Shown: in pieces, positions 1 through 46,633 of the stretch
Layout of the letters: each line of letters opens with the position of its first letter
Position numbering within the stretch: position 1 is the first letter of the stretch
Assembly (NCBI RefSeq): GCF_000142905.1
Contig: NW_013657669.1
Coordinates: forward strand, 62,001 to 126,000
DNA from: Thecamonas trahens ATCC 50062
Lineage: Eukaryota; Protista; Apusomonadida
Length of the DNA stretch: 64,000 nt
Reading direction: 5' to 3'
Notes under the pieces: model-generated
Seen by the model: only the letters and a program-made list of their open reading frames with translations
Database searches by the model: none
What the model was told of the DNA's origin: nothing
Translations under genes and position numbers: made by a program

Positions 1-285
1 CCGTCACCCATACACCAACCACGCCCAATTCAGAGCCCACCACAGAGTAAGTAAGCCAATGACCTGGTAACTCGTCCACCAGCAAAGCCCAGCTCCCCAC
101 CACTCGCTTTCACCCTGCCGACTGTGGCGCCCCGCCCGCTCTGCCGCCCCCCGCCCGCGCTCCCCGCCCCCCCATCCCACCCCCACCGCCACCTAGCGGG
201 GGCACAAGAGGAGGAAGGAAGAGGTGTTGAGGTTGGAAAATGGAGCAAGGGCATGGAGAACAAGTTGGAGAAGGTACGTACCCAC

Positions 286-420
286 TTGTGCGGTCTGCTC
301 CTCGTGCATGGCGCTCTCAATGTCTGCAGAAAGTTGGTTCAGCTGCTCGGGTGTCAGGCCGGACATGGTGCTGGGGGAGGAAAGGGGGGTCAAGTGGTCG
401 ACTGCGTCACCGGTTGCCAT
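286..420 (-). CDS. Probable first exon of a hypothetical gene; the remaining exons are not resolved and may lie left of the window
   Basis: ATG at 420 (or 366) opens MATGDAVDHL...LNQLSADIESAMHEEQTAQ. It is followed by a donor-like GTGGGTACGT and G-rich, intron-like sequence. Confidence 0.35.
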
Positions 421-597
421 GGCGCTGGCATTGTCATCACCACACCGATGGAGACACCGACTCCAAACCAATGGTCAGATGCAGTTGCAAATACAGATTA
501 TGTTGGATAGCTGTGGTGGGCTTTGGCCAGACCGCCCCTGTCTGCCCGCCTCCGCCCCTGCCCCTGATCCTTGTGCGCACAGCAGGCAGGGGGGAGG

Positions 598-786
598 CGG
601 CGATCAAGGGCGATCGAGGGCGATCAAGCTCGTAGCAGTGTGCCCGAGGCAAAAGCTGACCCTCTCGGATGGTTGGTGAAGAGTAAACTTCCGCACTGGG
701 TGAGTGTGGCGAGCAAGAGCGGGTGATCATGACCAACCACGACTGATCATGACCGACCATGACCGATGAAGGGCGATCAAGATCAA
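598..786. repeat. Cluster of short GATC-core direct repeats in the divergent intergenic region upstream of lpxC
   Basis: GGCGATC(A/G)AG occurs three times in tandem at 598-628 and again near 772. TGATCATGACC occurs twice at 724-754. Confidence 0.6.
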
Positions 787-978
787 TGAATGGCTATCAA
801 GGCCATATCAGGAACACGTCCGTGAAGAAACTCTCCCCTTTCCACAGGTTGGCGATGGCTGCCGTCTGTTTAGCACTCGGCCGATGCTGGCGGTGTGTGG
901 GTGTGGCTCCATCACGACTCAACTCGCTCAGAGGCAGCAAGTCGCTCATATCCCACCTCCACCCCACCACCCTCCGCC

Positions 979-1896
979 ATGCACACTCTTGCACGCAGAG
1001 TTGTTGTATCTGGTATTGGTCTACACTCGGGGCGCCCGGCGAGTGTCTCCCTTGCTCCGCTTCCTCACCACTCCCCTCATCCACATCTTGTGACTGCTCA
1101 GCTCAATGGCGTCATGACTCCGCTGGCGCCTGCCTTGGTCTCAGAGACTACTCTGGCGACAACCTTGTCCATCGGTCGGTGCTCTGTGGCCACGGTTGAG
1201 CATATGATGTCAGCTCTGGTAGGCTCCGGCATCGATGCTGCGATCATCGAGATTGAGGCCAATCAAGGTGCCGATACGGTGGAGATGCCCATTCTCGACG
1301 GGTCAGCGTCCGAGTGGGTGCAGGCTATCGCCTCGTGCGGCCGCGCCGAGCTTAGCGGCGACACCTCGTCAGCAACCTGCGCGCTGCTCGCGCCTCTCGA
1401 TCGCCCGCTGAGGGTTGACGATCCTAAGGGTACCAACGGCTTCATCGCATATAGCCCGGGAGCAGCGGCCGATCCGGACGTGTGCTCGCTGGACGTCTCG
1501 GTCGTCTATCCCGCACTCGGCAAGCAGCAGCTCTGCTGGGATTTTGATCCGTGGACAGAGGCTGGACGTGCGGCATACGCCGCAGACATCGCCCCGGCCC
1601 GCACATTCACCTTTGAGAGCGAGCTCGACGCACTGCGCGCCGCTGGACTCGCCGCCGGCGGCTCGCTGCACAATGCGCTCGTCTACACCGCGTCTGGTGC
1701 GCTGTATTCTGACCAGAGTCGCGACATGCTGCGTTTTCCCGACGACGAGGCCGTCCGCCACAAGACGCTTGACCTCATCGGCGACCTCACCCTCGCACCT
1801 GCCGCCTTTCATCGCCTCCGCGGCGGAGTCGTCGTCGCCCACAAGCCCGGCCACGCTCTCAACGTTGCATTTGCCGCCGCCCTCGCCGCTCTCTAG
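979..1896 (+). CDS. lpxC: UDP-3-O-acyl-N-acetylglucosamine deacetylase LpxC (lipid A pathway)
   Basis: Motifs TLARRVVVSGIGLHSG, TVEHMMSAL, EMPILDGSA, IAPARTF, GGSLHNALV, RFPDDEAVRHKTLDLIGDL and PGHALN. First in-frame ATG is at 979; intronless. Confidence 0.95.
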   Translation: MHTLARRVVVSGIGLHSGRPASVSLAPLPHHSPHPHLVTAQLNGVMTPLAPALVSETTLATTLSIGRCSVATVEHMMSALVGSGIDAAIIEIEANQGADTVEMPILDGSASEWVQAIASCGRAELSGDTSSATCALLAPLDRPLRVDDPKGTNGFIAYSPGAAADPDVCSLDVSVVYPALGKQQLCWDFDPWTEAGRAAYAADIAPARTFTFESELDALRAAGLAAGGSLHNALVYTASGALYSDQSRDMLRFPDDEAVRHKTLDLIGDLTLAPAAFHRLRGGVVVAHKPGHALNVAFAAALAAL

Positions 1897-8032: not shown

Positions 8033-11000
8033 TTACGGCGCGCTGGCAAGCATCTCGCGCATAATCGTCGGCAGTTCTCCCACATCGAGGCACACTACGG
8101 CCTGGCCACCGGGCAGCTCTTTGGCGAGCCATGACGCCACGCCCTCCTCAGCAATAAAGATGGCCGAAACATGCACGCGCTCGTCGCGGTCAAACTCGGC
8201 CCGCAGCGACTCGGGCGTCACCCCGTACGCGCCAAGGTTGGCATCCGAGACCAGGAAGACCAGATACTCATCGCCCTCCTCCTCGGTCACATTCTCGACA
8301 GCAAGTCGCAGCGCGTCGAGCGTCGAGTCGCCACGCGGCGCAGACGCTGCCGCGGTGTACAACGCCTCCACAACCTCGTACTTGCCCGCCGGCGTGCTCG
8401 GCACCTCGCCATATTCCACTATCGGTATGGCCGGTGAGCCGCCCGAGTGCCCCACCATCGACACCGAGAACTTGTGCTCCAGCCCGCGCAGCGCCTCCAT
8501 TACCATCACCATCGACCACGCCACCCGGTCCAGCCGGCCATCCCACGAATTGAAACGCGCCATTGACGCAGACACGTCCAGTACAAACCGCACACGCTTT
8601 GGCCGCGCCTGCCGCACCCCGGCCCGCGCCTCCGGCTCGCCCCGACGTCGATATATGTGACTCTCGCCGAGCATTCCGTCCACAAGCCGCCGGTCGTCGA
8701 GCTCACCTTGCGACTGGTTGCCGAGCCACTCACGCTCTTTCTCCTTGGCCTCAGCATTGTGCAAGATGACAGAGAGCTGCTGAATCTGTCGCTCCATCTT
8801 GGCGCACAGCGAGTCATACGCCGGCGACTCATCGCGCTGTCCGACCCCGCCTGACCCGTTCCGCAGCGCCATGGCCCGCTTTGTCTGCTCCAGTACCCGG
8901 ACCGCAGCCTCCTCGATCGCGCTCCGAGTCCCCGTATCCAGCTCGGACGACGCCGCCGCCTCTTCCGGAAGCACAACTTGTCCATCAACCACAGTGTAGC
9001 CGCCAAAACCGTCCGACGAGAGATCAGCACCAGCGCCGCCGCCGCCACCTCCTCCTCCGCCACCGCCACCGCCGCCTCCACCGCCGCCACCTCCTCCACC
9101 GCCGCCTCCGCCGCCACCTCCACCGCCGCCATCGCCTCCGCCTCCGCCTCCTCCCAAGGCATCAGCCGAGCTTACTGGCACAAACGATCCATCACCGGCT
9201 CCAGAATCGCCGCCACTACCGTTCTCGGCTGCTCCAGCTGGAGCACCATCGTCGTCATCGCCATCAGCGGGTGGCAACTTGTACCGCGCTTCGGCCACGC
9301 CGCGAACCGTCTCCTCCACTGACTCGAGACCCTCGCGCACAGCGTGCCATCCAGCAAGCTCCTCCATCAACGAGCCCTCGTCCAACGCCTGCCACTCGCG
9401 GATGACGCCGTCGGTGCAGACACCAAACAGTGAAGCTGGCCGATCGTCAGCGCTCTTTCCGATGCCAAGCGCAACAACAGGCGCATCGACAGCAATGCTC
9501 TTCATCATGTTGGCATCGAGGTCTGCAAGCGTGAGCCCGGCGTCCGAGCCGTACACTACAGTGCCCCACAGCGACTCGTCCTCGCTAGCGAGGTGCACGG
9601 CACTTTCCGGGTGGTGCGAGGTAAGGATGGGCGTTCCAGAGTCGAGACTCGGGAGGCTGGCCCACTCGGCGTGCTCCGGTGCGGCCCAGGGAATCTTGCC
9701 CAGCGCACCCTCGACTCCGTCACGCACAATCGCGCCAACAGCACCAGAGCCCAGTACCGCCAGCTGGCCGCGCGTTCCCAGTCGCGGGCCGGTCGAGAGC
9801 GCGCCGCTTGCGTCGCAGTTCACAACCGCATGGCTGCCGTCCGACAGTGAGACAAGCCACGAGCCACGAGCGCCGGCCTGGTCAGTCGCCGTCACACGCT
9901 GGACGTTGACCATCTCGGCGCCATCGGCGAGAAGATGTGGATAACTAGTGGCAGTTGCGCCGCCAGCAGCTCGAAACGAGACGCCCATTATCTTGCGCCC
10001 GTTGCGCTCCCACAAAAGGCCATGCAGCGCGCTGCAAGTCGCCACGCCGGGTGCAAATGCGTGCGGAGGTGGCGCTGCCTCCAGCGACGCCCGCGACGGG
10101 TCCATCAGCATCCGCATCGGGTTTGCGCCAGGCGCCTTGCCGGTCAGCGCCTCGGGAAGCTCGAGCTGAATGACGGTCTCGGGGTGCGCAACGCCGTTGC
10201 TTGCGCCAGGGACCGCAAACACAAGGCCGACCCGCGCGGCATCGATGACCACCCAGTCTCCACCTGGCGCACACACAATCGGCTGCACAAACGACGGCAG
10301 AAAGTCGAGTGCGGTCATGACTGCGCTGCTTCCGGCGCGCTCGCCAGTCACCAGTGCTGACGACCGCGCCCCGGCAAGCACGTAGCCGGCCGCATCATCC
10401 AGCCACGCGCCCGAGACCAGCCGCCGTGACACTTCCGCGAGCGGCAGCGGCCACGACTGGAGAAGCTCAGAGAACTGTCGGGTGCGTGCCGAGATCGGTG
10501 GCGTGACGCTGAGTGGCCGCGAGTCGGCGAACATGAAGCCGACGTTGCGCGCACGTACCTCGACAGCATCACCGCGCGCGGCCTCACCTGTAGGTGCAAA
10601 TAGCTCACACTTGGCCTTCCCTGCCCCGCTCAACTGCACTGGGTTGAGCGGCAGAGGACGGGCAAGGTCGATAGGAAGTGATCCAGCGACATCGGCAGCA
10701 TGGCCCGACCGCTCAGATGCGGCCCGGCGGGCGCCCGCGTGAGGGGTGTCGAGTGCAGAGAGCAGCGGGAGGCCGTGGCGAGTAAGGACCTCGTCCAGCG
10801 CCTCGAGGACCGGCGCGTCGTGCACATCGTAGTCAAAGACGTTGCCCAGGACTGAGAGCGGCGAGTCGCCAGGAAACTCCTGCAAATGACGCACAATGGC
10901 CACCAGCTCGCGTGCCGAGTACGGATACGAGAGCAGGCCTTGCTCGGTGAGACTGCGGAGCTCGGCAAAGGCAGCCGTGAGTGCGCGTAGAATCGGATCA

Positions 11001-13690
11001 GGGACATCGGGTGCGTACGCACGGAGCAGCGCCATCTCAGACGCCGCGTCCGGGTTGTCCACCACATGCGGTGAGAAAACATCGCCACACTCGGCGAAAA
11101 AGTCGTTGCCAAGAAACGGGTAGCCTGGCCGGTTGGCGAGGACAATCATGCGAAAGTCTGGATGGAGCGGGATGAAGCCGCGCTCGCGCTGCGAGGCGGA
11201 GAGCGCGTTAGGCGGGAGCGAGGTGATGACTCGGCCGTCGCCGAGCAGCATGGAGCCATCTTCGACGAGGCCCTTGAGCACGCACACCACCTCGAGCGGT
11301 GCCTTGTCGGCCTCATCGACCATGAGAACGCGGCCCTCACGGGCGGCGCGGACAAGCGGAGAGTCCTGCCACACCACGCTCCCGTCGACGAGCGTAGGCG
11401 AGAGCGTGAGCGATGGGACAGTCGTGTCGCGGTGGAGCTGGATGTACTCGCGCTCCGCGCCAAGAAGCTGCAGCATCCGATCGGCGAGCTTGTTCTTGCC
11501 GGTTCCCTGGTTGCCAATGAGCAGCAAGTGCTTCTCGCCGGCGGCAAAGTCAGCGGCCATCTCACGGAGGACAGTCAGATGGGACTGGGTCTCGTAGAAC
11601 ACAATGTTGGGGACGAGCTGAGGATTTGCGGCCTTGGCCTTAGGAAGGCTTACGTCGCCGATGGTGAGCACGTTGTCCGACGCGACAATGCTGAGCTCCT
11701 GGTCCGCAGCCGGCGGATGGATGTCATGCTCGGCGAGGAGGTTGGCAAAGGCAGTGCGGAGCGGGACTGGCATAAAGGCAGTAATGCAGACCCGGTTGAG
11801 CGCGGCGTGTAGCGAGTCGGGGTACGCCGCCACCCGGCGTGCGATCCGCAAGATCTGCCGGGTCGAGAGCGGCTCAAGCGCGTGGCCGTCGGCACTTTCG
11901 GCGCCGGTCGACCTCAGCGCGGCGATGACAGAGGCGAGCTTCTTGAGCGCTTCGGGACCGCCGGCCGCCTCGCTCCGAGTCTGGCTGACAAGCGAGAGCT
12001 GAAACTCAAGGTCCAACGTCGGCGCCGGAATCCAGGCAAAGTTGGGCAGGAGCTCCGAGGTAAGCCACGGGTTGGAGACGGCTGACGGCTCACCGAGCGC
12101 GAGGAGGCGGAATGACGGCGCGATGGCGTGGATGCCACTCTCTTCGAGCTCGGCAGGCGAGACACCACGCTTGGCAGCGAGCTGTCCATGCGCGTCGGCC
12201 GCCAGGTACCGCTCGCCGTTTGGCAGGTCAAGGGTCCGCGAGGTGAAAAGCGAGGAGAGCGCAGCGAGGAGCTCGGGCTCAAGGCGGTGCACGCCGTCGA
12301 GGGCGACAGCGCCGCCGTCGCGAAGCGCCGCCATCAGCGGTGAGTTGACGTACACAGTGTCACCATTGGCCGCGGTACCGCGGCGAACGAGCAGGTCAGC
12401 CATCGACATGTCGCGGAAGCACTGGATGGTGGTGAGCGGAAAGCCGAGGCGGGCAGCAAAGGCAGCGGCGAGCGAGGTCTTACCGACACCCTTGGCGCCG
12501 ATGATGGCAAAGTCGTGACCAGCGACGTGGGCCATGGTCGCCCGCTCGAGCGCAGACGCCTGGTTGGGTGCAAGAGCGGCGGCGCCGGTGGTATCGCGCG
12601 GCGCAGGGCCGATGGCGGCAGTGGCAGTGAGTCCGGCCCCAGTTCTTGCCGAGAAACGAAGTGTTCCGGTGTGGCTATCGCCGCCCGGCTCGACAGCAGC
12701 GAGCGCGTAGCCGGGATCACGGCGCTGCCCGGCTGCTGGCGGCCAGTTGGCGGCTGTAGCAATGTCGGTCAGGTCTATGCGGGCGGTGGCCGGCAGCAGC
12801 TCGGCTGGGTAGAAAAGGTCGAGAGCATCGCCCGGGCTGAGGCGCGGGAAAGTGCCGAGGAGGGCGGGCAGGCTACGAACGGCGCGCTCCGGAAGGTAGA
12901 GCAGGCCGCCCTGCTCAGAAGAGGCCGCGGCATGGGCCGAACGTAACGCTGCTGCGTAGACCATCAGCGCCTGGGCGTCCGAGGTACCAAAGGACGAGGC
13001 TGCGCCGACGCCGGCGATATAGGAGGCGTACTCGGGCAGGCTCTGCGGCGCCGGAGCAACAAACCTAGCCTGGAACCGCGACCGGAGAGGAGGATCGAGC
13101 GGATATCCCGGAAAGGTTGGGACAGGAAGGCCGAGGGCGACGACCATAAAGTCCTCTGAGACACGGACGATGCCATCGTCCGCAAGTAGGCGCTCGCGTT
13201 GCTGCGGCGTGGCATCCGGCAGAAGCGCATCAAAGGCACGAGGCGGCATGAGAAAGCGGCCATCGGGGAGGCGCATCTCTCTATTCTCTAGCAAGTTGTT
13301 AAGCAGCGGAAGAATGTTCCTCTCAGCCTTGTCAATGCCATCGAGGATGAGAACGCCGCCCGACTTTGCGGCCACGACCGGCGGGGCGTCTTCGTAGACA
13401 ACCGAGCCCGAGACAAGCTCGCGACGCTGCTTGAGATCAGCTTCAGTAGTATCTCTTGTCAGGGGGAGGACATGTGAGTCACGATCAATGGCATCACAAA
13501 AGTCAAGGGCCAGAGATCGTCGCTCAGGACCGGGAGGTCCGACCAGAAACACGTCCTGACGCAGAGCCGCCTTCTTGAGCAGCCAGGCGAGGTGAGGTCG
13601 ATGCGACGGTGGCAGCTGCGTGGCAGAGTTGAGCGCCCGTGACAAGACCATGTTGGTATGAGGGGTGAGTTGCCATACCCGGCGCAGCAT
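8033..13690 (-). CDS. VWA8: von Willebrand factor A domain-containing protein 8 (AAA+ ATPase plus VWA)
   Basis: QDVFLVGPPGPERR, LTRDTTEADLKQRRE, Walker A motifs GAKGVGKT and GNQGTGKN, VDEADKAP, C-terminal GELDDRRLVDG and VWA LDVSASM. A 63-nt in-frame intron at 13616-13678 (GTATGG...CGCAG) is possible. Confidence 0.95.
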   Translation of the reverse strand: MLRRVWQLTPHTNMVLSRALNSATQLPPSHRPHLAWLLKKAALRQDVFLVGPPGPERRSLALDFCDAIDRDSHVLPLTRDTTEADLKQRRELVSGSVVYEDAPPVVAAKSGGVLILDGIDKAERNILPLLNNLLENREMRLPDGRFLMPPRAFDALLPDATPQQRERLLADDGIVRVSEDFMVVALGLPVPTFPGYPLDPPLRSRFQARFVAPAPQSLPEYASYIAGVGAASSFGTSDAQALMVYAAALRSAHAAASSEQGGLLYLPERAVRSLPALLGTFPRLSPGDALDLFYPAELLPATARIDLTDIATAANWPPAAGQRRDPGYALAAVEPGGDSHTGTLRFSARTGAGLTATAAIGPAPRDTTGAAALAPNQASALERATMAHVAGHDFAIIGAKGVGKTSLAAAFAARLGFPLTTIQCFRDMSMADLLVRRGTAANGDTVYVNSPLMAALRDGGAVALDGVHRLEPELLAALSSLFTSRTLDLPNGERYLAADAHGQLAAKRGVSPAELEESGIHAIAPSFRLLALGEPSAVSNPWLTSELLPNFAWIPAPTLDLEFQLSLVSQTRSEAAGGPEALKKLASVIAALRSTGAESADGHALEPLSTRQILRIARRVAAYPDSLHAALNRVCITAFMPVPLRTAFANLLAEHDIHPPAADQELSIVASDNVLTIGDVSLPKAKAANPQLVPNIVFYETQSHLTVLREMAADFAAGEKHLLLIGNQGTGKNKLADRMLQLLGAEREYIQLHRDTTVPSLTLSPTLVDGSVVWQDSPLVRAAREGRVLMVDEADKAPLEVVCVLKGLVEDGSMLLGDGRVITSLPPNALSASQRERGFIPLHPDFRMIVLANRPGYPFLGNDFFAECGDVFSPHVVDNPDAASEMALLRAYAPDVPDPILRALTAAFAELRSLTEQGLLSYPYSARELVAIVRHLQEFPGDSPLSVLGNVFDYDVHDAPVLEALDEVLTRHGLPLLSALDTPHAGARRAASERSGHAADVAGSLPIDLARPLPLNPVQLSGAGKAKCELFAPTGEAARGDAVEVRARNVGFMFADSRPLSVTPPISARTRQFSELLQSWPLPLAEVSRRLVSGAWLDDAAGYVLAGARSSALVTGERAGSSAVMTALDFLPSFVQPIVCAPGGDWVVIDAARVGLVFAVPGASNGVAHPETVIQLELPEALTGKAPGANPMRMLMDPSRASLEAAPPPHAFAPGVATCSALHGLLWERNGRKIMGVSFRAAGGATATSYPHLLADGAEMVNVQRVTATDQAGARGSWLVSLSDGSHAVVNCDASGALSTGPRLGTRGQLAVLGSGAVGAIVRDGVEGALGKIPWAAPEHAEWASLPSLDSGTPILTSHHPESAVHLASEDESLWGTVVYGSDAGLTLADLDANMMKSIAVDAPVVALGIGKSADDRPASLFGVCTDGVIREWQALDEGSLMEELAGWHAVREGLESVEETVRGVAEARYKLPPADGDDDDGAPAGAAENGSGGDSGAGDGSFVPVSSADALGGGGGGGDGGGGGGGGGGGGGGGGGGGGGGGGGGGGGGGGAGADLSSDGFGGYTVVDGQVVLPEEAAASSELDTGTRSAIEEAAVRVLEQTKRAMALRNGSGGVGQRDESPAYDSLCAKMERQIQQLSVILHNAEAKEKEREWLGNQSQGELDDRRLVDGMLGESHIYRRRGEPEARAGVRQARPKRVRFVLDVSASMARFNSWDGRLDRVAWSMVMVMEALRGLEHKFSVSMVGHSGGSPAIPIVEYGEVPSTPAGKYEVVEALYTAAASAPRGDSTLDALRLAVENVTEEEGDEYLVFLVSDANLGAYGVTPESLRAEFDRDERVHVSAIFIAEEGVASWLAKELPGGQAVVCLDVGELPTIMREMLASAP
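9035..9153 (-). repeat. GGN trinucleotide repeat encoding a poly-glycine linker in VWA8
   Basis: (CCG/CCA/CCT)n on the + strand; a long Gly run in the translation. Confidence 0.9.
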
Positions 13691-22617: not shown

Positions 22618-22970
22618 NNNNNNNNNNNNNNNNNNNNNNNNNNNNNNNNNNNNNNNNNNNNNNNNNNNNNNNNNNNNNNNNNNNNNNNNNNNNNNNNNNN
22701 NNNNNNNNNNNNNNNNNNNNNNNNNNNNNNNNNNNNNNNNNNNNNNNNNNNNNNNNNNNNNNNNNNNNNNNNNNNNNNNNNNNNNNNNNNNNNNNNNNNN
22801 NNNNNNNNNNNNNNNNNNNNNNNNNNNNNNNNNNNNNNNNNNNNNNNNNNNNNNNNNNNNNNNNNNNNNNNNNNNNNNNNNNNNNNNNNNNNNNNNNNNN
22901 NNNNNNNNNNNNNNNNNNNNNNNNNNNNNNNNNNNNNNNNNNNNNNNNNNNNNNNNNNNNNNNNNNNNNN
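22618..22970. other. Assembly gap
   Basis: Run of N. Confidence 1.
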
Positions 22971-29975: not shown

Positions 29976-31306
29976 ATGGAAGCCTCGTTCCATGGGGCTC
30001 TCCTCGGCACCCTCGCCGGGGACGTTCTCGGAGCTCCCTTTGAAGGCGAGAGCATGGCCATGGTCCAACAGGTGATGCCGGATGGCCCGTGGTCTGTCGC
30101 CGACTCGCGCTCCTTTCCCAATGCTGTGCTAGCGGCGGTGGAACTCGGCGTCGATCTCGGCCCGTCGGCTGTTGGCGAGTACACCGACGACACCGAGGCC
30201 ACCTTTTCGCTCGCCGAGTCCATCGCTGCATGCCGCGGCGTCCATCGTCGCCATGCTGCCCTGAGTATGGCCCACTGGTGGGCCCGCGGCGCTCGCGGTG
30301 GATACTCGGGCTACACCTTTGCCAAGATGGCTGCGCTCGCGCGTGGTGCGTCGGTCGACGAGACCGGGGCAGGCACGTCCGCCATGCCCGGCGGCTCGTA
30401 CGCCAACGGCGGCGCCATGCGCATCGCTCCAGTCGGCCTTGCGTATGCTGCCTGCGCGCAATCGGTGTCTATTCCGCGCATCGGTGAGTCTTCCGGAGAC
30501 CCGGATGCTCTCGCACGTGTGGTCGAGTCCCTCCGCCAGCCAGTCGCCGCTGCTATTGCGTGCACCCACACCCATCCCGAGGCTATCGACGGCGCGGCCC
30601 TGCTGGCTGCCGCCGTCGCGCAAGCCGTTCACGTCTCTGCCGACGATGTGGCAACGCTCGATGGCCCGACCTGGTTTGGCGCGCTTGCTGCCGCATCAAC
30701 CACCGAGCCGCTCAAGACCAACATGCACACAGTGGCCGAGGCCCTTGCGAGCGTCGCGCCTGACGCGCCGCATCCAGAGAGCGTTTTTGTGCCCACCGAC
30801 AAAGAACTGCTGCAGAGCTGGACTGACAAATGGTTCCAGATCAGAACCTCGGACGCGATTCCCACCGTCCTCTACCTCATCGCCCGCTACGGCGTCGGCC
30901 CGCACGCCGCGCCCGCCGAAACCCTCGTCCGCGCCGTTGCGCTTGGCGGCGACANNNNNNNNNNNNNNNNNNNNNNNNNNNNNNNNNNNNNNNNNNNNNN
31001 NNNNNNNNNNNNNNNNNNNNNNNNNNNNNNNNNNNNNNNNNNNNNNNNNNNNNNATGACTGGCGCCGTCATCGGAGCTCTGCATGGCACAGAGTGGATTC
31101 CCGACGAGTGGCGGGCTACCTGGGAGAGCGATCCGCGGTACGGCGCGCCGGCGGCGGCTCCGCTCGCAGCCGCACTCGCCTCGCTTGCCTGTGCTGACGA
31201 CCAACCCGCTCTAGTTGTTCCAGACAACGATCCGCATGCTACGAACATCTCGGACGCTCTGGCTACCGAGCTTGCTGCCACCGAGCTTCCGACTCGGTTT
31301 GCCTAA
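29976..31306 (+). CDS. ADP-ribosylglycohydrolase (ARH3/DraG family), interrupted by an assembly gap
   Basis: GALLGTLAGDVLGAPFEG, YTDDT, SYANGGAMRIAP, THTHPEAIDGA, then GGD[gap]MTGAVIGALHG...WIP. Confidence 0.92.
30955..31054. other. Assembly gap inside the ARH gene, covering the expected DTDT metal-binding motif
   Basis: Run of 100 N. Confidence 1.
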
Positions 31307-39983: not shown

Positions 39984-40083
39984 NNNNNNNNNNNNNNNNN
40001 NNNNNNNNNNNNNNNNNNNNNNNNNNNNNNNNNNNNNNNNNNNNNNNNNNNNNNNNNNNNNNNNNNNNNNNNNNNNNNNNNNN
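39984..40083. other. Assembly gap
   Basis: Run of N. Confidence 1.
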
Positions 40084-46533: not shown

Positions 46534-46633
46534 NNNNNNNNNNNNNNNNNNNNNNNNNNNNNNNNNNNNNNNNNNNNNNNNNNNNNNNNNNNNNNNNNNN
46601 NNNNNNNNNNNNNNNNNNNNNNNNNNNNNNNNN
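46534..46633. other. Assembly gap
   Basis: Run of N. Confidence 1.

What the first reader, a model, noticed from the sequence alone, without database searches (positions are those of the whole stretch)
979..1896. Catalytically complete lipid A enzyme LpxC, without an evident transit peptide, in a eukaryotic protist
Seen: an intronless lpxC sits among clearly eukaryotic genes (SRPRA, RNF32, VWA8) with matching codon style. The Zn ligands and catalytic residues are retained (TVEH, ARTF, HKTLD, GH). Established: LpxC performs the committed step of Gram-negative lipid A synthesis, and plants carry organelle-targeted Lpx homologues of unknown role. Seen: the first in-frame ATG aligns with the bacterial N-terminus, leaving no presequence. 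An out-of-frame upstream ORF from ATG 855 (MAAVCLALGRCWRCVGVAPSRLNSLR) looks presequence-like and could be joined by splicing or a missing base. Inference: this may mark a lipid A-like pathway, either a mitochondrial relic or a horizontal transfer, in a lineage that appears non-photosynthetic. It is the strongest candidate for an undescribed system here.
Basis: partly seen in the sequence, partly recalled or inferred. Interest (0 to 1): 0.8.

Follow-up and report, generated by a model that had tools for sequence, protein, structure and literature searches.

The report
Lipid A pathway in an apusomonad
The free-living, non-photosynthetic flagellate Thecamonas trahens carries in its own chromosomes an intact lpxC gene and six more genes of the bacterial lipid A pathway. 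This is the same gene set known from plant mitochondria, so a relative of animals and fungi probably makes a lipid A-like glycolipid of unknown role.

Summary
Window 979-1896 (+) is an intact, intronless 305-aa LpxC. It matches Pfam at E 5e-61, keeps every zinc-binding and catalytic residue, and has a confident LpxC fold. It lies in gap-free sequence next to eukaryote-only genes on a 571-kb contig of Thecamonas trahens ATCC 50062.

It is not alone. The genome also encodes LpxA, LpxD, LpxB, LpxK, WaaA/KdtA and KdsB as single intact ORFs at separate loci. LpxH, LpxI and KdsA were not found. These are the six lpx genes reported for Arabidopsis, plus KdsB.

LpxA has an orthologue in a second apusomonad transcriptome, and it groups with alphaproteobacterial LpxA (97/91). 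LpxC has no relative above about 41-44% identity anywhere searched. It sits on a long branch outside the cyanobacterial clade that holds plant, green-algal and haptophyte LpxC, so its origin is unresolved.

As assembled, LpxC has no presequence, and its 5' end is unresolved. Joining ATG 855 would need one base fewer or two more, not one missing base.

This is a new member of a known kind, eukaryotic Lpx pathways. I found no paper describing it in a heterotroph. The scan noted this same stretch once before (s1-744812), and not on other DNA.

The parts
979..1896 (+). lpxC coding sequence: 305 codons plus the TAG stop. It encodes UDP-3-O-acyl-GlcNAc deacetylase. It is a single exon and the only LpxC copy in the genome.
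   Evidence: ORF. Pfam PF03331 E 4.7e-61. PDB LpxC E 2e-27 with aligned catalytic motifs. AF2 pLDDT 91.2, Foldseek TM 0.75-0.79 to P. aeruginosa, E. coli and Aquifex LpxC. Single genomic match.
855..978 (+). Unresolved 5' region. ATG 855 (Kozak-like GCGATGG) and ATG 884 are both out of frame with lpxC. The ATG 855 frame reads an Arg-rich, acid-free, presequence-like peptide. It could be the true N-terminus only if the assembly carries one extra base (or lacks two) somewhere in 874-978, for example in the C-runs at 950-975.
   Evidence: ORF list and ATG map. An in-frame stop at 871-873 upstream of lpxC. Composition: 5 R+K and 0 D+E in the first 35 residues. Codon-usage scoring favours no frame clearly.
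979..1143 (+). The first 55 codons of LpxC contain no Asp or Glu, 3 Arg and 6 His. This may be an embedded, uncleaved import signal, which would be an alternative to a missing presequence.
   Evidence: 0 D+E here, against a minimum of 1, median 4 and maximum 7 in the same alignment columns of 60 homologues. The whole protein is acidic (31 D+E against 19 R+K).
367..854 (.). Divergent intergenic or promoter region between lpxC and a minus-strand gene that starts at 366. It holds a 3'-splice-site-like tract (pyrimidine run then CAG, 831-847) and GATC-core repeats (about 598-786).
Evidence: Read directly from the sequence. No function was tested.

Best explanation
This is a genuine nuclear gene of Thecamonas trahens for a working LpxC. 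LpxC is the zinc deacetylase that performs the committed second step of lipid A (Raetz pathway) synthesis.

It acts within a nuclear-encoded set. LpxA O-acylates UDP-GlcNAc. LpxC removes the acetyl group. A short LpxD, lacking the N-terminal domain, N-acylates. An unidentified hydrolase replaces LpxH, as in plants. LpxB joins the two halves. LpxK phosphorylates the product to lipid IVA. WaaA/KdtA can add Kdo activated by KdsB. The source of Kdo is unknown because KdsA was not found.

Shown: the genes, their integrity, their catalytic residues, their eukaryotic chromosomal setting, and conservation of LpxA in a second apusomonad.

Inferred: the pathway runs in the mitochondrion. The acyl donor is 3-hydroxyacyl-ACP. 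In a cell without a plastid, that should come only from mitochondrial type II fatty-acid synthesis (my own knowledge). LpxA, LpxD and LpxK begin with Arg-rich, acid-free extensions. The plant enzymes are reported to be mitochondrial.

The genes were taken from bacteria before the sampled apusomonads diverged. LpxA is of alphaproteobacterial type.
For: LpxC integrity and fold.

Pathway census:
- LpxA: NF003657, 267 bits against a cut-off of 226.
- LpxD: NF002060, 217 bits against a cut-off of 207.
- LpxB: Pfam, 141 bits.
- LpxK: Pfam, 114 bits.
- KdtA: Pfam, 86 bits.
- KdsB: NF003952, 203 bits against a cut-off of 193.
Each is an intact ORF at a separate locus.

Eukaryotic setting: SRP receptor alpha, spatacsin and others lie beside lpxC, and an mTERF gene lies beside lpxD. 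There is no gap within 20 kb. GC3 and codon usage match the host.

Not a contaminant: the best relative of LpxC in 5.8 billion clustered proteins, in 1.8 billion representatives and in two DNA collections is 39-44% identical. LpxK is at most 31% identical to anything else and is already catalogued as T. trahens AMSG_00855.

Conservation and expression elsewhere: an Amastigomonas sp. transcript (EukProt) and a Tara Oceans contig encode LpxA orthologues with N-terminal extensions. They form a 100/98 clade with Thecamonas.

Presequence-like N-termini: LpxA, LpxD and LpxK.

[quoted passage not shown] 2011).
Against: - There is no expression or lipid data for Thecamonas itself.
- As assembled, LpxC has no presequence, and two out-of-frame ATGs precede it.
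- LpxC, LpxB, LpxK and KdtA score below NCBIfam equivalog cut-offs, and LpxC is a long branch (1.1-1.2 changes per site). Changed specificity or relaxed constraint therefore cannot be excluded.
- No apusomonad orthologue of LpxC or LpxK was found.
- LpxH/LpxI and KdsA were not found.
- Targeting was judged from composition only. No trained predictor was available.
Confidence: 0.7

Rival explanations
1. The genes are real and active, but the pathway works outside the mitochondrion, in the cytosol or on endomembranes. LpxC is translated from ATG 979 with no targeting signal. The product would be a surface or endomembrane glycolipid acquired by horizontal transfer, for example to decorate the cell coat of a bacterivore.
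For: The assembled lpxC has no N-terminal extension, and ATG 979 aligns with bacterial start sites. No frame upstream shows a clear coding signal. LpxB has almost no N-terminal extension. NCBI's own LpxA model starts at the inner Met and so has no presequence.
Against: LpxA and LpxD need acyl-ACP, which a plastid-less eukaryote is expected to make only in mitochondria (own knowledge). The Amastigomonas and Tara LpxA orthologues carry 24-35 residue N-terminal extensions. The uninterrupted Thecamonas ORF, which includes the extension, aligns with them to the C-terminus better than the NCBI model does. LpxD and LpxK start with Arg-rich, acid-free stretches. The first 55 residues of LpxC are uniquely free of acidic residues.
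Confidence: 0.15
2. lpxC is a decaying or re-purposed remnant. The ORF is still open, but it no longer serves lipid A synthesis, either under relaxed constraint or with a new substrate.
For: Its branch is the longest or second longest in every tree built. It scores below the TIGR00325 equivalog cut-off (160.8 against 187.25). It has four lineage-specific insertions of 4-6 residues. No orthologue was found in the other apusomonad data. Upstream out-of-frame ATGs would depress translation.
Against: All 28 columns that are invariant across 61 LpxC sequences are kept, including the zinc ligands and both catalytic residues. The AF2 model is confident (pLDDT 91, pTM 0.92) with a full LpxC fold. The enzymes immediately before and after it, LpxA and LpxD, are well conserved and score above curated cut-offs.
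Confidence: 0.08
3. The gene comes from bacterial contamination or a chimeric join in the assembly. Thecamonas cultures contain bacterial prey.
For: The gene is intronless and belongs to a bacterial family. The culture is not axenic (own knowledge).
Against: The sequence is continuous with eukaryote-specific genes on a 571-kb contig, and the nearest gap is 20 kb away. A divergently transcribed neighbour 600 bp upstream has a GT..AG intron. Seven pathway genes are scattered over separate large contigs. No bacterial sequence is more than 44% identical. Codon usage is host-like.
Confidence: 0.02

Closest known systems
Bacterial LpxC (UDP-3-O-acyl-GlcNAc deacetylase; E. coli, P. aeruginosa and Aquifex structures such as 4MDT, 5U39, 1P42)
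   Same: Same two-domain fold (TM 0.75-0.79), same length, same zinc ligands (H75, H261, D265) and same catalytic E74 and H292, T209, K262 and D269. LpxA and LpxD are present in the same genome.
   Different: It is encoded in a eukaryotic nucleus and is only 30-44% identical to any bacterial protein. It has four small insertions and an acid-free N-terminal 55 residues. It scores below the NCBIfam equivalog cut-off.
Arabidopsis/plant nuclear Lpx pathway (AtLpxA, C, D, B, K, KdtA; Li et al. 2011, as cited in PMC5741210 and PMC3087551)
   Same: The same six enzymes are present and the same gaps occur: no LpxH and no clear LpxL/M. The genes are nuclear and dispersed. N-terminal extensions occur on several enzymes. 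KdsB is present.
   Different: The host is a heterotrophic apusomonad with no plastid. Plant, green-algal and haptophyte LpxC nest inside cyanobacteria (100/99), whereas Thecamonas LpxC lies outside that clade. Thecamonas LpxA is of alphaproteobacterial type, and no plant LpxA is among its 120 best hits. LpxC has no presequence as assembled, while the Riccia LpxC has about 60 extra N-terminal residues. KdsA was not found.
Lipid A/Kdo pathway of the phagotrophic green alga Cymbomonas tetramitiformis (Burns et al. 2015, PMC5741210)
   Same: A bacterivorous protist with a predicted lipid A plus Kdo pathway. That paper used T. trahens as a comparison genome.
   Different: Cymbomonas is photosynthetic, and its pathway was interpreted as ancestral to green plants. 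The paper does not report the Thecamonas pathway.

Membership tests
LpxC (PF03331 / TIGR00325) | Full-length match to the family model above the curated threshold | tested here: met
   Pfam: 207.1 bits against a cut-off of 27, covering model positions 2-267 of 268. The stricter NCBIfam equivalog TIGR00325 is not reached (160.8 against 187.25).
LpxC (PF03331 / TIGR00325) | Zinc ligands His-His-Asp, and catalytic Glu and His (E. coli H79, H238, D242, E78, H265) | tested here: met
   H75, H261, D265, E74 and H292 fall in columns that are invariant across 61 sequences, and they align to the P. aeruginosa structure sequence. The E. coli numbering is from my own knowledge.
LpxC (PF03331 / TIGR00325) | Two-domain beta-alpha-alpha-beta LpxC fold | tested here: met
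   AF2 pLDDT 91.2 and pTM 0.92. Foldseek top 50 hits are all LpxC, E 5e-26, TM 0.75-0.79.
LpxC (PF03331 / TIGR00325) | Deacetylase activity on UDP-3-O-(3-hydroxyacyl)-GlcNAc | not testable with these tools
   This needs an enzyme assay or complementation.
Raetz (lipid A) pathway | LpxA, LpxD, LpxB and LpxK co-occur with LpxC in one genome | tested here: met
   All were found as intact ORFs. KdtA and KdsB were found as well.
Raetz (lipid A) pathway | A UDP-2,3-diacylglucosamine hydrolase (LpxH, LpxI or LpxG) | tested here: not met
   TIGR01854 and PF06230 gave no match in six-frame searches. LpxG was not searched. Plants are reported to have the same gap.
Plant-type organellar Lpx pathway | N-terminal mitochondrial targeting peptide on the enzymes | tested here: inconclusive
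   LpxA, LpxD and LpxK have Arg-rich, acid-free N-termini, and the LpxA orthologues share an extension. LpxC from ATG 979 has none. No trained predictor was available and there are no localisation data.
Plant-type organellar Lpx pathway | Common descent with the plant and algal genes | tested here: inconclusive
   Thecamonas LpxC is outside the cyanobacteria plus plastid-eukaryote clade (100/99) and is its weak sister (89/75). The AU test does not reject Thecamonas plus Riccia (p 0.54). LpxA shows no plant affinity.

The most novel reading that the evidence does not exclude
The apusomonad lipid A pathway is a vertical relic of the alphaproteobacterial ancestor of mitochondria. On this reading, some mitochondria in the lineage next to animals and fungi still build a lipid A-like glycolipid for their membranes. 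The pathway would have been lost in opisthokonts and in most other eukaryotes, and partly replaced by cyanobacterial genes in plants.
Probability: 0.12. Interest if true: 0.9.

Novelty: new member of a known kind. Interest (0 to 1): 0.6.

Why it matters
Eukaryotic lipid A genes have been discussed almost only for plants and algae. There they can be read as plastid baggage, and their product and role are still unknown.

A near-complete set in a plastid-free heterotroph sister to Opisthokonta changes the picture in three ways.
- The pathway is not tied to photosynthesis.
- At least LpxA points to an alphaproteobacterial source.
- The plant-type (cyanobacterial) and apusomonad LpxC are different acquisitions or replacements.

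This gives a second, independent system in which to ask what eukaryotes do with lipid A precursors. It also makes the question of whether any mitochondrion retains lipid A experimentally addressable.

Public gene models need correcting. The stored LpxC model starts at Met46 and lacks the first strands of the fold. The NCBI LpxA model is cut at both ends.

Tried and rejected
**Contamination or chimera.** Rejected; see the fourth rival explanation.

**Origin from plants or plastids.** Thecamonas LpxC lies outside the 100/99 cyanobacteria, green and haptophyte clade. The AU test cannot exclude Thecamonas plus Riccia (p 0.54), so this is weakened but not excluded.

**Alphaproteobacterial LpxC.** The AU test is also non-decisive here (p 0.099, difference in lnL 26). 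The best tblastn hit is a Parvularcula MAG at 39%.

**GC3 by frame and codon-usage log-odds over 855-978.** No frame stands out, so these cannot settle the frameshift idea.

**A short intron joining ATG 855 to lpxC.** Only GT..AG pairs of 37-49 nt restore the frame. That is implausible against a published mean intron length of 443 nt.

**Search for an lpxC orthologue with a native N-terminus.**
- Word search, profile search of 1.8 billion representatives and JGI metagenome DNA scan: nothing above 41-44% identity.
- The ESM Atlas placed it nearest Streptophyta-rich LpxC clusters. I treated that as a lead only.

**Literature.** Nine full-text searches found no paper linking Thecamonas or apusomonads with lpx genes or lipid A synthesis. 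Li et al. 2011 (PMC3136250) is not held, so I cite it second-hand.

**Tool limits.** KdsA absence therefore rests on a single Pfam search. LpxG, mtFAS, ACP and the Lpt/MsbA transporters were not searched.

Full report
**What is at the coordinates.**
Window 979-1896 on the + strand is an uninterrupted ORF of 305 codons ending in TAG.
- It matches Pfam LpxC (PF03331) from model position 2 to 267 of 268, at E 4.7e-61.
- It matches every solved LpxC in the PDB, the best being P. aeruginosa at E 2e-27.
- It falls short of the strict NCBIfam equivalog score: TIGR00325, 160.8 bits against 187.25.
- In an alignment of 61 LpxC sequences, all 28 invariant columns are kept. These include E74/H75 (TVEH), T209/F210 (ARTF), H261/K262/D265/D269 (HKTLD..GD) and H292 (KPGH). 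Together they supply the zinc ligands and both catalytic residues.
- An AlphaFold2 model is confident (pLDDT 91.2, pTM 0.92). Its 50 best Foldseek matches are all LpxC structures, with TM 0.75-0.79.

**Where it sits.**
The window is G000:C11:62001-126000 of a 28.7-Mb, 131-contig assembly, and the contig is 571 kb. Earlier notes of this scan call the organism Thecamonas trahens. I confirmed that independently:
- the LpxA and LpxK ORFs of this genome retrieve NCBI proteins named Thecamonas trahens ATCC 50062;
- the LpxK hit is AMSG_00855 at 100% identity.

The neighbours of lpxC are eukaryotic: SRP receptor alpha with its eukaryote-specific N-domain, an AAA_5/VWA8-like ATPase, spatacsin, an F-box/LRR protein and RecQ. 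A divergent minus-strand gene starts at 366 and has a GT..AG intron of about 90 nt.

There is no N-gap within 20 kb. GC3 is 0.68 against 0.70-0.80 for the neighbours. The in-frame versus off-frame codon log-odds of lpxC (0.136) are of the host type. Contamination or a chimeric join is very unlikely.

**The rest of the pathway.**
Six-frame family searches of the whole genome, followed by Pfam and NCBIfam scans of the ORFs, gave the following.

| Enzyme | ORF | Score |
|---|---|---|
| LpxA | L002:871-1842, 324 aa | NF003657, 267 bits (cut-off 226) |
| LpxD | L008:1414-2166, 251 aa; no N-terminal uridine-binding domain | NF002060, 217 bits (cut-off 207) |
| LpxB | L004:1255-2589 (-), 445 aa | Pfam, 141 bits |
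| LpxK | L005:1348-2454 (-), 369 aa | Pfam, 114 bits |
| WaaA/KdtA | L007:748-2217 (-), 490 aa | Pfam, 86 bits |
| KdsB | L016:1342-2676 (-), 445 aa; 150-residue N-terminal extension | NF003952, 203 bits (cut-off 193) |
| LpxL-like acyltransferase | L017 | 31 bits (weak) |

LpxH, LpxI, the LpxD N-domain and KdsA were not found.

The genes lie at separate loci on contigs C25, C4, C12, C3, C18, C11 and C67. The lpxD gene is next to an mTERF gene.

This is the same six-gene set (A, C, D, B, K, KdtA; no H) reported for Arabidopsis and rice (PMC3087551, section 15). The plant enzymes are reported to be largely mitochondrial (PMC5741210, section 28, citing Li et al. 2011; I could not read the original).

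**Relatives and origin: LpxC.**
LpxC has no close relative anywhere I could search.
- The best non-self hit among 5.8 billion clustered proteins is 41% identical.
- No representative among 1.84 billion exceeds that.
- The best GTDB genome hit is a Parvularcula MAG at 39%.
- The best JGI metagenome hit is 39%.

In a careful 58-row tree, plant, streptophyte-algal, prasinophyte and haptophyte LpxC (named through) nest with cyanobacteria at 100/99. Thecamonas is a long branch (1.21) placed as weak sister (89/75) to that whole clade, and not inside it.

AU tests reject neither Thecamonas plus Riccia (p 0.54) nor Thecamonas plus alphaproteobacteria (p 0.099). The origin of lpxC is therefore unresolved.

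**Relatives and origin: LpxA.**
LpxA is more informative. Its best hits are an Amastigomonas sp. transcript from EukProt (54% identity) and a Tara Oceans contig (55% identity).
- The three form a clade at 100/98.
- That clade joins, at 97/91, a group holding every named alphaproteobacterial sequence in the sample: Rhodovibrio, Rhodospirillales and two MAGs.
- The rows for the careful tree were chosen after I had seen a quick tree, and only four alphaproteobacterial rows carry names. I rate this as good but not conclusive evidence.

No plant LpxA is among the 120 best hits.

LpxK is at most 31% identical to anything else.

The picture is an old, apusomonad-wide, bacterial-derived pathway that is not the plant one.

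**The N-terminus.**
ATG 979 aligns with, and is slightly shorter than, bacterial starts. Riccia LpxC has about 60 extra residues. An in-frame stop lies at 871-873.

Upstream ATGs at 855 (good context) and 884 are both out of frame. The ATG 855 frame encodes an Arg-rich, acid-free peptide.

Because 978 is a codon start in that frame, joining it to lpxC needs one base fewer (or two more) in the true sequence, or an intron of 3n+1 nt.
- The only GT..AG pairs that fit give introns of 37-49 nt. The mean intron length published for this genome is 443 nt, with 1.04 introns per gene (PMC5741210).
- Another agent reported single-base errors elsewhere in this assembly (s1-744703). I did not test that.
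- GC3 and codon log-odds do not favour any frame in 855-978.

A separate observation may matter here. The first 55 residues of LpxC contain no Asp or Glu. The same columns in 60 homologues hold 1-7, with a median of 4, and the protein as a whole is acidic. This could be an embedded import signal.

LpxA, LpxD and LpxK start with presequence-like stretches. The LpxA orthologues share an N-terminal extension. The uninterrupted Thecamonas ORF aligns with them to the C-terminus, whereas the NCBI model is truncated.

The protein model stored for lpxC in the searched collection (P0001, 260 aa) starts at Met46. It would lack the first strands of the fold, including the GIGLHSG motif.

**Mechanism and verdict.**
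The most likely reading is a working, nuclear-encoded Raetz pathway that ends at lipid IVA or a Kdo-bearing derivative and operates in the mitochondrion. Two things are inferred here:
- the location, from the need for acyl-ACP (own knowledge), from N-terminal composition and from the plant precedent;
- the product.

The missing LpxH step mirrors plants. The Kdo source is open, since KdsA was not found in a single search.

I found no paper that links Thecamonas or apusomonads with lpx genes. Public databases do already name LpxA and LpxK automatically.

I class this as a new member of a known kind. It carries real evolutionary interest because the host has no plastid and is sister to Opisthokonta.

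Noticed in passing
L008:1414-2166 (G000:C4:661199-661951): Thecamonas LpxD is a short form of 251 aa. It matches only model positions 113-317 of TIGR01853, and the PF04613 N-terminal domain is absent genome-wide. Its N-terminus is Arg-rich (7 R+K and 0 D+E in the first 35 residues). A convergent mTERF gene lies directly downstream.
   Followed up: partly
L016:1342-2676 (-) (G000:C11, about 456 kb from lpxC): A KdsB (CMP-Kdo synthetase) scores above the curated cut-off and has a 150-residue N-terminal extension of unknown nature. KdsA (PF00793) gave no match in the genome, so the source of Kdo is unexplained. Salvage from bacterial prey is one speculative possibility.
   Followed up: partly
L017:1324-2685 (-) (G000:C67): A weak LpxL/LPLAT-like acyltransferase (Pfam Lip_A_acyltrans, 31 bits) with a presequence-like N-terminus. 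It is a possible late acyltransferase. A PhyH-domain gene lies next to it.
   Followed up: no
L002:871-1842 compared with P0121: The NCBI gene model for T. trahens LpxA (237 aa) starts at an inner Met and replaces the conserved C-terminal helical domain with a short tail. The uninterrupted 324-aa ORF aligns with the Amastigomonas, Tara and alphaproteobacterial LpxA sequences to the end.
   Followed up: yes
window 1114-1896 (P0001): The protein model held for this gene in the searched collection and in the ESM Atlas begins at Met46 (260 aa). That start would delete the first beta-strands of the LpxC fold.
   Followed up: yes
L020 (Tara Oceans contig, ERZ908037), 733-1725: A marine metagenome contig encodes a 330-aa LpxA that is sister to the Thecamonas protein. 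It has N- and C-terminal extensions, and its neighbouring genes have no Pfam match. It probably comes from an uncultured apusomonad-like eukaryote.
   Followed up: partly
window 193-366 (-): A divergently transcribed gene starts at 366 (MSGLTPEQLNQL...). It has a GTGGGT donor near 284 and a pyrimidine-rich TAG acceptor near 193, giving an intron of about 90 nt. I did not identify the gene.
   Followed up: no
window 598-786: Repeated GCGATCAAG and TGATCATGACC-type GATC-core motifs lie in the shared promoter region between lpxC and the divergent gene. Another reader also noted them (s1-755157).
   Followed up: no
window 8033-13690 (-): The AAA_5/VWA8-like ATPase begins with a presequence-like N-terminus (MLRRVWQLTPH...). 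This fits the mitochondrial location of animal VWA8 (own knowledge).
   Followed up: no
LpxC trees: Plant, streptophyte-algal, prasinophyte (Pyramimonas) and haptophyte (Prymnesium) LpxC all fall inside a cyanobacterial clade at 98-100 support. So LpxC, at least, of the plant pathway looks plastid-derived, although the enzymes are reported to be mitochondrial.
   Followed up: partly
window 22618-22970, 30955-31054, 39984-40083, 46534-46633: Assembly gaps (runs of N). The first one explains the apparent GC dip at 22-23 kb.
   Followed up: yes
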